The position numbers were made by a program, and so were the translations under genes. Shown in pieces: positions 23,768-31,764 of a stretch of DNA of 64,000 bases. The number at the start of each line of letters is the position of its first letter. The first letter of the stretch is position 1. Below the pieces are notes generated by a model that ran no database searches, was not told the DNA's origin, and was given only the letters and a program-made list of their open reading frames with translations. The DNA is from Calcarisporiella thermophila CBS 279.70 (taxonomy: Eukaryota; Fungi; Calcarisporiellomycota): the NCBI RefSeq assembly GCF_041956535.1, contig NW_027192192.1, positions 809,796 through 873,795 of the forward strand, read 5' to 3'.

Positions 23768-24947
23768 TTAAAAGAGGCGCAAGCGACGGTACCCGCAGAA
23801 AACGCCACGATTGCCCTCCTTGCTCTGCTCTTTGCACACAGTTGCCGCAGGACAAGCCATCTTAACCCATTTACCAAAGCGACACATCTTGAAGCCATTG
23901 GACTTTCCTTCGGAGTCACATTCCATTGTATTGGGTTGACATTCCTCCTTGCCATTTCCTGGATTTTGTCCATTACCAGGTGTCTCAGGGTTCTCAGGGT
24001 TCTCAGGCTGATCAGGCTGACCAGTTGGCTGCGATGGCTCCGAGGTTTTCGAGGGCTTCGTAGGCTTGGATGTCTTGGTCGGCTTGTTGGTGGGCTTAGG
24101 ATCTTTGGTCGGCCTGTTGGTGGGTTTAGGATCTTTGGTAGGAGTTGGGTTCGAAGGGGACTTGGTAGGCTTGTTGGTCGGCTTCTCAGGCTTCTCAGAC
24201 GTTTCGGGCTCCTCGGGTTCCTCAGGTTCCTGAGGAGATCCTTCAACATCGCCGTTTCCGCTAACGGTGATCGTCTTGCGTTGAGCAAACAGATCCTTTC
24301 CGGTGTTCTTATTGCCTGCGAATTCCGGGATTGTCTTTCTACCCGGTAGATTCACGACCAGCAACTCCTTACCAGTAAGCTTTCCGTTCTGGGATCCAAC
24401 GATATTAACATCAGCACAGTTCATGTAATACTCGCGGTTTCCAATAGCATTAACCCAAGTCCAAGCGAATACAGCCTATCGAAAATGAGACAATCAGTAA
24501 CCATATCCCGGTGAAAGAAAATAGAGGGGGAGAGGGATTATCTACCTTGCCAGAAGGCGCATTGTTGGGGATTTTGATGTTATAATTTCGCTCCAAAGGG
24601 CAGGTTTCCATCTCATCCTGAATCACCACAAAAGTCTTGCCTTTGTCGTAGCTCAGGGCAAACTGACAGTGGCCTCCTCCGTGGGGAGCGCCACCAACAA
24701 TAGAAACTGGGACCGTGTCTCCAGCCTTGAAGGTGCTCTCGGCCGGACCTTCCTTGAAACCACGGCACGGGAAGGTAAAGCGACCCCCCAGAGGAGATGT
24801 CATATCAAAATCAATGTCGCTGTTCTTAGAGTAGAATTTGGAAAACTTGGAGCGACGTGGAGCAGGTTTCTCCATCTCCATGTGCGCAGACACGAGCGAG
24901 ATGAGAGAGAGAGCAGTGACGAAAATGGGAAGCTTGGAAAACATCAT
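23768..24947 (-). CDS. Secreted AA11-type lytic polysaccharide monooxygenase with P/T/K-rich linker and C-terminal CBM19-like module (1 intron)
   Basis: Signal peptide ending SA followed by N-terminal His; FPCRG, GGAPHGGGHCQFALSYD, FAWTWVNAIGNREYYMNCADV; Cys module C...C...F..C..GKWV.M.CP..TVC. Confidence 0.88.
23960..24235 (-). repeat. Coding tandem repeats in the LPMO linker (TKDPKPTN[RK]P x2, PEN/PEE, GNGQNP)
   Basis: Visible 30-nt and 9-nt periodicity in the DNA and protein. Confidence 0.8.
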
Positions 24948-26423
24948 CTTGAAGAGAGATTGGCGGAAAAGGTCTTTTCAAAAGACGAGAATGTGGAGTA
25001 TATCAGGAGAGATTTCGACCCTGCGAAAGACGCGAGAAATAGGAGGCGGGGGAGATAAATAAAACGAAAGGAAGTGGTGCGGGGGTATGCGTGGGATAGA
25101 TCCTTGAACCTGCAAGGTGTTTGGATGAAGAGGATGATGAGGAAGAAGAAGTTTGGAGGAGGAAAGGTGTGAGGAAAGCCGCAACGAGCATGCAGCCGCG
25201 ACCTTTATATGCCGTTTCATTTGACCCGCGAAAAATTTCGGGCTCCGACGGTCCGAGAGATCAAACCTAGAGAGGCCGCTCCATTGGAACATCGTCAATC
25301 AAATAATTCCTATATAGGCCAAGCCAGACTGGTAATTAACTTTCCAATGGAGTCGAGTCGAGCCACAACACCCTCGTTGTTTCCAAGCTCAACTTCCTTG
25401 GCCAGTTAGTCTTGCAAGCTCAACTATACGCGGAATACCTGGCTTTTTTGAATTCGCGTGAGCTGCACCAGATAACCTCAGGTTGCTCACAAAGAGTACA
25501 GCTCTGTGGAGTAGCTTCTCGAGCACAACATGAAACCAGAACCCAGACCTCTGCAGAACTTCCCGATACTCGCGCCTTCCGAAATCGTCTTCCGAGGAGA
25601 GGAATCGGTATTGCTTATGTTTAGCCACGCAAAATATATCCTCCTCTCATGTGTCTCATCTTGGCGAACATTGCGCGATGTATGGTGAAGAGCCCAAGGA
25701 TCCCAGAAGTTCGTGGTTTGCGGCATCCAACGGGCAGAATAAACCCACATCTCTTTTGCAATCAAGGGCCTTAGATCCGCAGGCAGAGAGGAGGCCACTA
25801 TCTGGTGACGACAGCCGGAAATGCATTATCCCAGATTGAGTTTAATATACACCTGGGAATATCGCCCACATCGAGGAACTCAGGCAAGCACTATCTAGTG
25901 AAGGAGAAAATAACTGAGTTTCGGATTTTGGTTTGCTTCGACTGAAAAAAAAAAGAACTCTTAGAAAATGGAGCGGCTACAAGCATTTACAGGTTTGGAG
26001 GTGTTGCCGGATATTGCCGAGCGCTAGGAACGGAGCAAAGATTCCCGAGTTGAAATTAACGGTGCCTTGGTTTAATTGAATGCGGACACCAGCCATTTTC
26101 TCCTGGACTATATGATCATACTTGCGGGTGAAAACTAGGTTGAGTTAGTAGATTTCTGCTGCGCTTGACGAAATCGACCTCTTATCACTAGAGTGACAAC
26201 GCCGAAAACTTTCGTCTTACAATAAAATGGATCCTGTTACTATGTGCTCTATGCAACTCAAATGGTAGTAGGCTATAGTTTTCTATTCAGAGTTTATATC
26301 CAGGAAACTTTAAGTTTGGGAGAGGCAAAAATGGGAAAACACGTGTACATATACTATATCAATTAATTACAGTTTATTTACAACGAAAACACCATGGAAT
26401 ACACGGTCTGCGTTCAGAACATG

Positions 26424-29215
26424 TCAGAGAGCCATTAATGGGCCGCCATACTCCTTCGAAATGCGGATATTTACTTTGGCTCTTACCTCGCGGGCAGCCT
26501 CGCTCCATTCTGGGCTGTGTTTGGACGCTAATGTGAATGAAAAGAGGGCGGTTAAGGATCCAATAGTTTGGCAAACAAATAGAAATAAGACGAGTCATTA
26601 TTCAGAAAAAAAAAAGATATAGTTCAAAAGTTGAAAGTAGTAGGTGGGCCTTTTCCAAATCTCTATCTTCCACCAATGCGATCAGATACTGCTCGAACAG
26701 TTTAACGTCTTCCGGCTGTGGACCCACTTCGTTGTGTGTGCGTATCCACTCTCGGAGAATCCCCCGTAAGTCAGAGAGCTCGGTTTTGCCGAGAAGCGAG
26801 GGCTTTTCTCTTCTAGCCCCGGGGAGCTCGCTAGAAATTCTTGGCGGCTTTTCAGAAGAAAGTTAATAACTTTGCACGTGAGAGCACGAGCAGTGGGTTA
26901 ATTAATGATACCTGTATAGGGGCGTCTATGGAGTTTCTGGCCTCTCTTTTTCGAGGCTCTAAGAGTGGGGCCTCCGCTTTCTTGTGGGAATACTCTTGCA
27001 AAACTTCACTTTTCAATTCTAGTCCACACGAAATAGATGATTAGAATGCGTGACTCCTCCTTATTGAGAGCAAAAGAAAGACACCTGGTGGCAATGCATC
27101 CAAAAATTCAGGGTCTATTTCAGGTGGCATTTCTCGCCGCGTGCTACTCCCAGCAGGAAAGTCGCCTTCGCGCCAATGCTGCGTAAGCGTGATGGCGGAA
27201 ACATTTGGCTGCCGGATCGGCTTGTCCATAAACTTCTTCTTTTTGCGAGGGCTTTTTTTGGGTCGGCCCCTACCTCTTCTCGGAGGAGGCTCTACGGTGT
27301 CGGTGGAGGAGGTGCGGGCCATGGGCTGCGGAAGTGGCTCCTGAAGAAATTCGAGAATTTCATTTCTAACATGGCTCGGAAGCTCCTCTAATACATCGGG
27401 ATCAATCTGATAGAAGAGGGCATAAGTGGAAAAGATGCTTGGATGCAGTGAATAATAAATAAAAAGGGGTAGAATACCTGTGACGCAGTGGGGAGTAAAC
27501 TCGCCCTCTCATTCGGAGGAAGCCGCTTCGAAGCACGCATGGGTTCTTTGCCATCCGACCGCCGCTTTTCGGTGCTATTGCAGCTGTAGGCCCTTAGCAT
27601 CTGGTTTCGCATTTGCTCAGGCATGGCCAAGAGCGCTTCTGGATCCAGCTGAGACCAAGGCGGGAGATCAGTTTGTGTCGATGGCTCATTGACCGGCTCA
27701 ACTCTATTCGATATTGGGGGTAAACCCCTGGATTCTAGCTCTGAGATTTCAATTGAAAGTCCTTGATAAGACGGTAGAGCCATGTATGAGCGAGTTTATG
27801 TGGAAAATAAATTCTCCCATATAAGGTCTCAATTATAATTATAACCGTAATTACCTAATATTTCAGCTGGTGGAATATTGAGCTGTCGAAACATTATGTA
27901 GCTCTCGGCCGATATTTTGGGGGTATCGTTAGAAGCTTCGGACCAAGTTATGGTTTTGCAGTGGGAATCATCATCCTTGCGAGTAATTACCTAGCGCGAA
28001 CATAAAAAGTACCTCAGATAATGAGAGAATGTTAGGATTTCACTTCTATTTCTACTCACTTTTAAAGAAAGCTGTCTTCCCCGCCGCCCAACTTCTCTCA
28101 GATGACCACTTACTTCACCGGCCAGCCCGTGAAGGAATCTCTATATTATCAATCATACGTCAGCAGATGCAAGGATAAATACAAGGGAATTGGAAACCTA
28201 CCTCCACTTGTTCGTTGGTCTCGAAGCGAATTCCCCACTAAACGAAATATCATGTTAAATATTTCTATTCAGTCATGCAAGTAACTTATTTGCCTACGGT
28301 TACTTCAGCCCCAATCGAAGTTTGCGAAAGATCCTCTTGTATCCTCTCCTGGGTCCGGGGCTCCGGCCGCGGGGGGGTTTCAGGCACCTCCACTCTCTCT
28401 TCCTCCTCTGGCGTCTTTACCTCCTCTTCACTCTTCTGAATCCCTCCTTTTCGTAATGCAGAAGATTCTCCAGCGTTGTTCGACCGAGAACTTGACGCTG
28501 ACGCACTAGGGCTCGATGCATAAGCAAAGATGAGGCGTTGATCAGATTTGGGTTGAAGAAGGCGGAAGCGCGTCCAAGATAAGAGTCTCCCATGCTTTAC
28601 CGACTCAGTTATCCATTCCGGGAGCACAACGCGGTAGTTCCTGTTGTTAAAAAAATATTTAGCAAATAGTTTAATTAAAAAAATAGAGAAGAAGGGTAGA
28701 AAGGAGATGGAAAAAAGGGCGCACCGAAATTGATGCTGTTTGCTTGGGGTCAGATTACTGCACACGATATGCGTCACTTTGGATGGCTCCACTGGTGTAA
28801 AATGAAAAAGGAAAAACTGTGGTTATGGCATTGGAATTCTAGTGTAATAACTATTTAAATTACAATAGTGCTGGAAGCTGCCTCCGTGTTCGCATACCAA
28901 TCTCCTAATCTCGTTGTGATTCGGCTTTGTGTATCCGTTGACATGGATCGTGAGTCCTTGGAAGATTGGGGGGAATTTGCGGCCCGCATTTTTGTAGCTA
29001 TGGCGTAGAAGAAGAGGATAAATTTCTTGGACATTTTCCTAGCACCCCATTGAGCATTACATTTCATATTCTTGATCATTTAACTTTAGTCGCTTCGCAT
29101 GCATGTACTTCCCAAACTCCCCAAATTGGATAGCACCGTAAGGATCGAGCTCATCTACCGTTTCCACTTCCTTGTTCCCTTTAGCGCCATCGCGTCTCCT
29201 GGAATCCTCTGCCAT
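26424..29215 (-). CDS. REV1: REV1-like protein lacking the polymerase catalytic core (BRCT - degenerate PAD - 3 UBM - AT-hook - CTD)
   Basis: FGEFGKYMHAKRLKL; BRCT IFQGLTIHVNGYTKP...EHGG; SIGAEVT|WGIRFET; UBMs (SQLDPEALLAMPEQMR, SQIDPDVLEELPSHVR, EIDPEFLDALPPELK); CTD LREWI...P..EDV..F..YL..LVEDRDLEK...W...YG. Confidence 0.88.
26533..26620 (-). other. U12-type (minor spliceosome) AT-AC intron
   Basis: 5'ss ATATCTTT, branch point TCCTTAAC (26551-26558), 3'ss CAC. Removing it restores the Rev1 CTD frame. Confidence 0.88.
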
Positions 29216-29637: not shown

Positions 29638-31764
29638 TCAGCTCTTTCCATTTCCCAATCGTCCCTCTTTTTCCATCCTACGCCTCGCTGGGTCATTCTC
29701 CATAGCCAAAACAAAGGAGGCTTGCATCTGTTTATGGCGATCCTCGATATAGCCGTTCAGATCAACAGAATCAGAAGGCGAGAATAGACTCTCCCCATCC
29801 TGCGATATTATCGGTGGGGTGGTGAGCTCTGAAGACGACGCAGTATGGATAACATCGTGGTCCACCACGGCCTGGTAGAAGAGCACATAGCCGGATCCCG
29901 CCATTGGGGCGTCACCAAAGTATTTCGAGATTTCGGATTCATCGATTTCCTAGATAGGGGGAAGAGTTGGGGGACAAGGTGGATAAGAGACGAGGAGCTC
30001 TACACCTACCTCTACCAGGTCGTCGTCAAACAGCACCCACTTGTCATTCGTTTTAGTGATCGCAATATAATGACCATACTGCAAGCCACTGTACGATGTA
30101 GAGAGGCAGTGAGATTTAATAAATAGGGCACCGCACTTCATCAACACGAACCTTCCAATATGGACCACGATGGCAAATAGCTCGTACATACGATCCGAAT
30201 CCTCAGCATTGTCAGACTGATCCGGAAAGAAAAAACCAAGCGTTCCCATTCAGTAAATATTTCCAAAATTGAAAAAATTGCTTAAAGAGCTTACAGTATT
30301 AAATAATCGTAACTCAAAGGGAAACGTCACACGATAGGAGAGCTTAGCATACCGCTGCAGACGTTCCTGGTATTTGAAACGTTTCAGATGCAGTGCAAGG
30401 ACATAGGGCAGTTTTTTTATTTTCATTCTATTCAGTATTAGCTGGGTTATCTATCATTTAACAGAGGGGTCCCGATCAAGATAGCTACCTTTTCTCAGCC
30501 TCCTGAAGCCCGCAGCAACAATCGCAAAAGAACTTATTTCTTTGGCACAGCATCTCGCTCGCTGAGAACTGACGCAGGCAGGAAGTCACCGACGTATTCT
30601 CTTCAATGTCAATCGAGAGGTCAAGAAAGGCCTCATCCCGACACGTCACCTAGCCAAATTGTTGACACCTAGAATTTCAAAGCCCACTTTTCTCCAGACC
30701 AAAAAAAAACTTACCGTCTCACAAGTCAAGCATCTAGTTTCGTTGGTCAGTATTCCCTCGAAGAGCTGGTGAATCCAAGTGGACCCCGCGCCGCTATTCG
30801 AATGTGAAAAGTGGTGCGATTTTATAGTCCCATTGCTGCTTGACAAACTCGCCCGCTCATCCGACGAGTTGCTGGCAGTATGATCATCGCTCTCCAAGGC
30901 CATCCTCTTCTGGTACCGAAGTATATCTTCAGCCAGCGCGTTTAGCAAATACATAAGAAACTCGTGCGCATCTTGGTGGTCGCTACCTCGGAATAAACCT
31001 GTTTGATATTGCCGCGTGAGTATGAGTATACAGAAAGCACGGAAGAGAGAATAATAACCATTTTCTCGTTTGAGCTTTGCGATAAGTGCGGTGGGTGCAA
31101 TTACGGTATGGTTTCGTCGCTGTGTCCCTATTTTCCAGAATAGTTGCTTCAGTGCCAAGAAAATGGTGTCGTCCATCCCTGGCACCTCGAACTCCCCCCC
31201 ATCGGTCCCCGGTGGAATCTTATTCGAAGAGAACATAGGGTATGTCCCCATTCTGGTCGTATTGTTCGACATATTGGCGACTATCGACAGAGCTCCCATG
31301 AGGGATGGGGGAGATTGAATAGTTTCATCCAGCGACATTTTGCTGAATCTATCGGTGATAAATTCTTTTCTTGAAGTGGCGCTAGGCGAACTGGGTGCGA
31401 CGGGGCCACCTTGGGTCTGCAGGGGAAAAACAACATTGGGGTAACTTTGCACACACTCGCGGAAGGGTTTGCACGAGAAGAGGGCCTGGAGAATAGAATT
31501 GCAGAAGCAGGTATTACCAAACTATAAAAAAAAAGAGATCAGCTTTTGAATCGCAACGAGTAATCTGTCAAAGGGCTACATTTTCGAGTCCGGTGTAATG
31601 CTCTGTGGTAGAGAGTAAAATATCGTTGGAGAGGGATCGGTTGGATTGCGAGTTCTAGAGCAAACGAAATTTATGTACATCTGCATGCCAGAATCTAAAT
31701 TCGATAATAAGCAAGATCTACTCACAGTTGTCTTTGTTCCGACTATCCATTTCAAAAGTGACAT
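29638..31764 (-). CDS. Ubiquitin-specific protease, USP12/46 (Ubp9/13, CreB) type
   Basis: GLEN|[62 protein letters not shown]. Confidence 0.93.

What the first reader, a model, noticed from the sequence alone, without database searches (positions are those of the whole stretch)
26424..29215. REV1 homologue with the whole polymerase catalytic core missing: a scaffold-only Rev1
Seen: one continuous exon (~28642-28298) runs from the end of the BRCT (WITESVKHGRLLSW) through only ~80 low-complexity codons into SIGAEVT|WGIRFET, which is the start of the little-finger/PAD domain. No N-digit, palm, fingers or thumb sequence (HVDxDCFF, SxDE motifs) lies anywhere in the 2.8 kb gene, and no intron is large enough to hide them. 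The PAD is also eroded, lacking the usual P.KF.GHG.CD loop. All exons I could reconstruct stay in frame, and the BRCT, three UBMs and CTD look well conserved. Established: Rev1's main role in translesion synthesis is non-catalytic, binding Ub-PCNA via the UBMs/BRCT and Rev7/Pol zeta and other Y-family polymerases via the CTD. Inference: this is a naturally evolved, catalytically absent TLS adaptor still under selection.
Basis: partly seen in the sequence, partly recalled or inferred. Interest (0 to 1): 0.85.

Follow-up and report, generated by a model that had tools for sequence, protein, structure and literature searches.

The report
Fungal Rev1 lacking its polymerase core
In the heat-loving fungus Calcarisporiella thermophila, the only copy of the DNA-damage-bypass gene REV1 has lost its whole enzyme part but kept its protein-docking parts, which looks like a natural test of whether Rev1 can work purely as a scaffold.

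Summary
Observation confirmed. The minus strand (29215-26424) holds an intact 12-exon, 666-aa REV1 of Calcarisporiella thermophila (neighbouring MetE 100% identical to its protein). It keeps M1, BRCT, PAD, three UBMs and CTD. BRCT lies 106 aa from the PAD entry, against 344-771 aa in 121 homologues. Three profiles found no Rev1 core elsewhere in the assembly, only Pol eta-like and Pol iota-like genes. REV1_C is single-copy. Nine of 11 intron positions match Mucoromycota REV1 genes; exon 4 fuses two ancestral exons. A second in-frame deletion (13 aa) removes the G-loop that binds the evicted template guanine, present in 129/129 homologues. The PAD keeps 20/40 conserved residues (relatives 144/158, p=3e-8), while M1+BRCT (35/42) and CTD (14/14) are at baseline. 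So the loss is old, and scaffold modules stayed under selection. Best reading: a non-catalytic Pol zeta adaptor. No core-less Rev1 turned up in databases, papers or earlier scan notes (which cover this genome only).

The parts
26424..29215 (-). REV1 gene without polymerase core, 12 exons, 666 aa
   Evidence: frame, splice sites; intron positions shared with Jimgerdemannia, Bifiguratus, Umbelopsis REV1
29072..29140 (-). M1 helix motif (aa 26-48), exon 1
   Evidence: alignment; identity to other Mucoromycota 0.52 against 0.44 among them
28556..28966 (-). BRCT domain (aa 63-147), exons 2-4
   Evidence: Pfam BRCT E 1e-4 on exon 2; M1+BRCT keeps 35/42 conserved columns
28298..28640 (-). Exon 4: fusion exon joining the BRCT end, a ~75-aa Ser/Glu/Pro-rich linker and the PAD entry; site of the core deletion (about 1.6-2.0 kb of genomic DNA in relatives)
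   Evidence: single copy in the genome
27730..28324 (-). PAD / little finger (aa 225-328), exons 4-8, degenerate
   Evidence: IMS_C on exon 6 and in the genome search; 20/40 conserved columns kept, net charge -4 against median +5
27967..27972 (-). Site of the 13-aa in-frame deletion of the PAD G-loop (equivalent of yeast Lys681/Met685/Gly686)
   Evidence: role of the loop from PMC5645340
27586..27666 (-). UBM 1 (aa 350-376)
   Evidence: 73% identity to Jimgerdemannia Rev1 residues 1004-1033; motif
27344..27495 (-). UBM 2 (aa 407-433), split by intron 8
   Evidence: Pfam UBM E 5e-7 on exon 9, two stretches
26990..27118 (-). UBM 3 (aa 509-529), split by intron 9
26427..26805 (-). Rev1 C-terminal domain (aa 570-666), exons 11-12
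   Evidence: Pfam REV1_C E 1e-11 and 0.03; 14/14 conserved columns kept; only REV1_C match in the genome
26533..26620 (-). U12-type AT-AC intron (5' ATATCTTT, branch TCCTTAAC, 3' AC) inside the CTD
   Evidence: removing it keeps the frame into the last REV1_C helix

Best explanation
This is the sole REV1 orthologue of C. thermophila. An old in-frame internal deletion removed the N-digit, palm, fingers, thumb and thumb-PAD linker, so it has no dCMP-transferase activity (shown: the catalytic residues are physically absent). It most likely works as a non-catalytic translesion-synthesis adaptor (inferred from homologues). The UBMs and BRCT recruit it to ubiquitinated PCNA. The CTD binds Rev7/Pol zeta on one face and the FF motifs of Pol eta or Pol iota on the other. 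M1-BRCT docks on Rev3 and DNA and tunes Pol zeta. Insertion opposite lesions is left to Pol eta, Pol iota or the replicative polymerases. The PAD has lost its template-binding features and survives as a partly constrained, probably PCNA-binding or structural, remnant (weakest step).
For: Shown: intact frame and canonical or U12 splice signals. Shared intron positions. No core in the window or genome. Single CTD. The G-loop is present in 129/129 homologues and deleted here; it binds the evicted template G (PMC5645340). Domain-specific decay: PAD 20/40 against 144/158 (p=3e-8; still 20/34 without the loop), M1+BRCT 35/42 against 150/169 (p=0.43), CTD 14/14 against 49/55. Terminal branch for PAD 0.93 against 0.41-0.48 in single-species relatives; M1+BRCT 0.45 against 0.34-0.42. 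MetE shows no general rate increase in this lineage (0.64 against 0.64). Partners: REV3 with intact catalytic motifs and Rev7-binding-like proline motifs, PCNA with the K164-equivalent lysine, a Pol eta-like gene with FF motifs, a Pol iota-like gene. Literature: M1, BRCT and CT are the only Rev1 parts resolved in the yeast Rev1-Pol zeta cryo-EM structure (PMC11276120). Catalytically dead Rev1 keeps its regulatory role (bioRxiv 10.64898/2026.01.21.700666). An isolated yeast PAD fragment, aa 623-767, binds PCNA (PMC4990258).
Against: One assembly only, 454/SOAPdenovo (PMC11393059 supplement). No second species with the same architecture. REV7 was not located by my own search: HORMA found only a MAD2-like gene, which also shows the first-look filter can miss divergent genes. 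No fold or binding test. A catalytically dead point mutant keeps the DNA-binding core, so yeast data do not prove that a core-less protein is functional.
Confidence: 0.8

Rival explanations
1. Assembly artefact or very recent strain-specific deletion: the real gene is a normal full-length REV1.
For: 454/SOAPdenovo short-read assembly. No reads could be checked. Every homologue retrieved has the core or is an end-truncated fragment.
Against: The junction is in frame, gap-free, single-copy and repeat-free. No orphan core piece on any of 116 contigs. The conserved R-G-I-D-x-R-P-L linker end and the R-[QK]-S motif before the PAD are gone or changed. The G-loop deletion in exon 7 and the PAD-specific decay (p=3e-8) are separate, older lesions that a mis-join would not create.
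Confidence: 0.06
2. Pseudogene or gene in neutral decay after Rev1 function was lost, as in the complete REV1 losses reported for Glomeromycotina.
For: PAD decay. No Pol kappa detected. REV1 loss is known in Mucoromycota (bioRxiv 10.1101/2025.09.02.673565).
Against: 666 codons without stop or frameshift, and 11 intact introns including a U12 intron. CDS GC 0.51 against intron GC 0.34. M1, BRCT and CTD at baseline conservation while the PAD lost half its conserved sites. REV3 is intact.
Confidence: 0.04
3. Split or duplicated gene: the catalytic core, or a full second REV1, is encoded elsewhere and missing from or missed in the assembly.
For: BUSCO missing 1.7%. The genome search scores only first-look candidates.
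Against: A Rev1-core profile recovers even 33-aa exons of the distant Pol eta and Pol iota paralogues but no Rev1 exon, and IMS_C finds the eroded PAD exons. A core working in trans would need the G-loop, which is deleted.
Confidence: 0.04
4. Expressed and selected, but mainly a brake on Pol zeta or a non-TLS adaptor (recombination, cross-link repair, G4 replication), rather than a promoter of lesion bypass.
For: M1 is the best-conserved element relative to baseline (0.52 against 0.44), and M1 mediates Rev1's inhibition of Pol zeta on undamaged DNA. Catalytically dead yeast Rev1 keeps this role.
Against: Three UBMs and a fully conserved CTD fit recruitment to Ub-PCNA and polymerase switching. 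The two roles are not exclusive in yeast.
Confidence: 0.06

Closest known systems
Fungal Rev1 (Jimgerdemannia RUP45435, Bifiguratus OZJ05683, Umbelopsis, Mucorales; yeast Rev1, PDB 2AQ4/8TLQ)
   Same: Domain order M1-BRCT-PAD-UBMs-CTD, intron positions, single-copy status and sequence (about 50-60% in BRCT, 34% in CTD).
   Different: No N-digit, palm, fingers, thumb or catalytic Asp/Asp/Glu. G-loop deleted. PAD degenerate and acidic. 666 aa against about 800-1460 aa.
Engineered catalytically dead Rev1 (yeast rev1-cd / D467A,E468A type; discussed in bioRxiv 10.64898/2026.01.21.700666)
   Same: No dCMP transfer, with M1, BRCT, UBM and CTD kept; these mutants retain most scaffold and regulatory function.
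   Different: The mutants keep the folded, DNA-binding core. Here about 350-400 residues are physically absent, and the allele is natural.
Complete REV1 loss in Glomeromycotina and Microsporidia (bioRxiv 10.1101/2025.09.02.673565)
   Same: Loss of Rev1 polymerase activity in an early-diverging fungal lineage.
   Different: There the gene is gone, followed by Pol zeta. Here the scaffold half and REV3 are kept.

Membership tests
Rev1 orthologue | N-terminal M1 helix plus single BRCT | tested here: met
Rev1 orthologue | UBM repeats | tested here: met
   three UBM-like repeats; Pfam UBM E 5e-7
Rev1 orthologue | Rev1 C-terminal domain (PF16727) | tested here: met
   best non-repeat hits of the CTD exon are Rev1 proteins
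Rev1 orthologue | Descent from the REV1 locus (shared gene structure, single copy) | tested here: met
   9 of 11 intron positions match Jimgerdemannia/Bifiguratus at the same motifs; one REV1_C in the genome
Y-family DNA polymerase / dCMP transferase | Palm-fingers-thumb core (PF00817) with catalytic Asp, Asp, Glu | tested here: not met
Y-family DNA polymerase / dCMP transferase | N-digit with the templating arginine (yeast Arg324) | tested here: not met
   the core profile includes the N-digit; no hit in the window or genome
Y-family DNA polymerase / dCMP transferase | PAD with Rev1 G-loop | tested here: not met
   PAD present but the G-loop is deleted
Rev1-type TLS scaffold (function) | Binds Rev7/Pol zeta, Ub-PCNA and RIR motifs; needed for induced mutagenesis | not testable with these tools
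Rev1-type TLS scaffold (function) | Transcribed and spliced as modelled | not tested

The most novel reading that the evidence does not exclude
[quoted passage not shown] It would define a minimal Rev1 scaffold and predict loss of the C-opposite-abasic-site mutation signature.
Probability: 0.5. Interest if true: 0.85.

Novelty: new variant of a known kind. Interest (0 to 1): 0.72.

Why it matters
Rev1's catalytic activity is dispensable for most mutagenesis in yeast and vertebrate mutants, yet the enzyme core is kept in every complete homologue retrieved here. Why it is kept is an open question. A free-living fungus that deleted the core but held M1, BRCT, UBMs and CTD under selection is a natural separation-of-function allele. 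It shows which modules the scaffold needs, and they match the three parts seen in the Rev1-Pol zeta cryo-EM structure. It gives a compact, probably thermostable protein for structural work on the mutasome. It also makes a testable prediction about the mutation spectrum at abasic sites and N2-guanine adducts.

Tried and rejected
It did not name the places as human-like. Later searches of this region were by reference: protein-level exon searches and one own-genome DNA search of exon 4. The spliced 666-aa model was not sent to any database search or structure predictor. It was searched exon by exon by reference, and the joined model was built only inside scripts from coordinates, for the frame check and for alignment with proteins already fetched. 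The deposited annotation of this genome was not returned. Searches for other core-less Rev1 proteins were blank: representatives search with the CTD exon, two word-index searches, JGI metagenomes (one Mortierella-like full-length REV1, used as a control) and ESM Atlas without IMS clusters. These have limited reach and do not prove absence. Paper searches found no report of a natural core-less Rev1. Rejected: core hidden in introns (all 60-93 nt) or flanks (a USP gene ends at 29641); core on the other strand; the C10 and C29 IMS hits being a split Rev1 core (they are Pol eta-like and Pol iota-like with their own C-termini); the C8 hit (E 0.13, no Rev1 motif). The low UBM1 identity is a misalignment of repeats, since the local match is 73%.

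Full report
Observation. The minus strand from 29215 to 26424 carries a 12-exon gene that splices to one 666-codon frame with no internal stop; all introns are 60-93 nt. Ten introns are GT-AG. The last (26620-26533) is a U12-type AT-AC intron with a TCCTTAAC branch site, and removing it joins the two halves of the REV1_C match. Exon-by-exon Pfam scans give BRCT, weak IMS_C, UBM and REV1_C but no IMS. Full-length fungal Rev1 proteins match the window at BRCT, PAD, UBMs and CTD and skip everything between, for example residues 139-638 of the Jimgerdemannia protein. An unfiltered HMM of 126 Rev1 cores finds nothing in six frames of the window but scores E 1e-92 on a control Rev1 locus. The distance from the BRCT tryptophan to the PAD entry motif is 106 residues here and 344-771 (median 534) in 121 homologues.

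Organism. The neighbouring MetE gene is 100% identical to VTP21DRAFT_4444 of Calcarisporiella thermophila, and the next hits are at most 63%. PMC11393059 lists this genome (CBS 279.70) as 454/SOAPdenovo with BUSCO 97.4% complete and 1.7% missing, and does not mention Rev1. That the window comes from exactly this assembly is an inference. No close relative was available.

Is there a core elsewhere? In the whole assembly (28.2 Mb, 116 contigs), REV1_C matches once, in this gene. Pfam IMS, a Bifiguratus core, a profile of eight Rev1 cores and the DinB model all return only two loci, on C10 and C29. C10 has Pol eta features, including a C-terminal zinc finger. C29 is closest to Pol iota (E 1e-12). 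The Rev1 profile picks up even 33-residue exons of these distant paralogues, and IMS_C finds the eroded PAD exons, so a true Rev1 core should have been seen. No Pol kappa was detected. The first-look filter is imperfect, though: the HORMA search found only a MAD2-like gene.

Anatomy of the loss. Nine of the eleven intron positions (three in the N-terminal region, four in the PAD, two in the UBMs) fall at the same motifs in the Jimgerdemannia and Bifiguratus REV1 genes, some also in Umbelopsis. This independently supports the gene model. In those genes the BRCT-to-PAD interval spans 2.0-2.4 kb with seven or eight introns; here it is under 0.4 kb with one. Exon 4 is therefore a fusion of the start of the ancestral post-BRCT exon with the last few codons of the exon before the PAD. 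The cut falls at the PAD boundary (yeast PAD = residues 621-738, PMC5645340). Exon 4 is single-copy, gap-free and without repeats.

A second lesion. In exon 7 a separate in-frame deletion of 13 residues removes the K-H-x-G-H-G-x-C loop. The loop is present in all 129 full-length homologues; the three regex misses show it in the printed text. It aligns with yeast KYMGMG, the G-loop whose Lys681, Met685 and Gly686 hold the template guanine evicted by the N-digit. This element matters for catalysis, so its loss agrees with the missing core. The conserved arginine of the D/E-x-R-G motif and several other basic residues are also changed. The PAD net charge is -4 against a median of +5 (minimum -2) in 127 homologues; part of this shift comes from the deleted loop.

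Selection. A leave-one-out count of conserved columns gives: PAD 20/40 kept against 144/158 in four other Mucoromycota lineages (p=3e-8; 20/34 without the loop); M1+BRCT 35/42 against 150/169 (p=0.43); CTD 14/14 against 49/55. Tree branches agree (PAD 0.93 against 0.41-0.48; M1+BRCT 0.45 against 0.34-0.42), and MetE shows no lineage-wide acceleration. The PAD thus acts as an internal clock: enough time passed for it to lose half its conserved sites while M1, BRCT and CTD lost no more than expected. This argues against an assembly error, a recent deletion and neutral decay. It is protein-level evidence; dN/dS could not be computed.

Mechanism. Shown: the protein cannot be a dCMP transferase, and its interaction modules are conserved. 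Inferred from homologues: UBMs and BRCT bring it to ubiquitinated PCNA; the CTD binds Rev7 and RIR (FF) motifs on opposite faces; M1-BRCT contacts Rev3 and DNA. M1, BRCT and CT are the only Rev1 parts resolved in the yeast Rev1-Pol zeta cryo-EM structure (PMC11276120). M1 restrains Pol zeta on undamaged DNA, and catalytically dead Rev1 keeps its regulatory role (bioRxiv 10.64898/2026.01.21.700666). An isolated yeast PAD fragment binds PCNA (PMC4990258), a possible reason the remnant is kept. The partners are in the genome: REV3 on C4 with intact catalytic motifs and proline motifs resembling Rev7-binding sites, PCNA with the K164-equivalent lysine, and a Pol eta-like gene with FF motifs.

Comparison and novelty. 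By descent it is the REV1 orthologue. It fails the defining tests for a Y-family polymerase and should not be filed as one. It most likely works like an engineered catalytically dead Rev1. All homologues retrieved have the core or are end-truncated fragments. Whole-gene REV1 loss is reported in Glomeromycotina and Microsporidia, but paper searches found no natural core-less Rev1. These searches have limited reach. Earlier notes of this scan, which cover this genome only, hold nothing comparable.

Limits. The genome's own annotation was not returned. The claim rests on one assembly of one species.

Verdict. A real and unusual new variant of a known protein: a naturally core-less Rev1 whose scaffold modules remain under selection. 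Confidence in the scaffold reading 0.8; interest 0.72.

Noticed in passing
window 26533-26620 (-): U12-type AT-AC intron in the REV1 CTD. The same pattern was not found in the Jimgerdemannia, Bifiguratus or Umbelopsis REV1 genes. REV3 (L030:2796, 71 nt) also has an AT-AC intron, so both TLS genes would depend on the minor spliceosome.
   Followed up: partly
G000 whole genome: Only two Y-family polymerase loci were detected (Pol eta-like on C10, Pol iota-like on C29); no Pol kappa.
   Followed up: partly
window 27254-27283 (-): The RRGRGRP/basic segment between UBM2 and UBM3 also occurs in the Jimgerdemannia and Mortierella-like Rev1, so it is ancestral rather than an innovation. It could supply residual DNA binding or a nuclear signal.
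   Followed up: partly
window 28641-28724 (-): Intron 3 is 84 nt, in frame and stop-free, so retention would insert 28 hydrophobic residues into the BRCT without breaking the frame.
   Followed up: no
window 29641-31540 (-): A ubiquitin-specific protease gene (GNTCFCNS and HY motifs) ends about 425 nt upstream of the REV1 start codon on the same strand.
   Followed up: no
window 23770-24980 (-): Secreted protein with a His at the predicted mature N-terminus and a Pro/Thr/Lys-rich tail, resembling a lytic polysaccharide monooxygenase (resemblance from memory, not tested).
   Followed up: no
L033 and L034: The deposited Jimgerdemannia (RUP45435) and Bifiguratus (OZJ05683) Rev1 models appear mis-spliced at the PAD entry: intron bases retained in the first, an early donor dropping six residues in the second.
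   Followed up: partly
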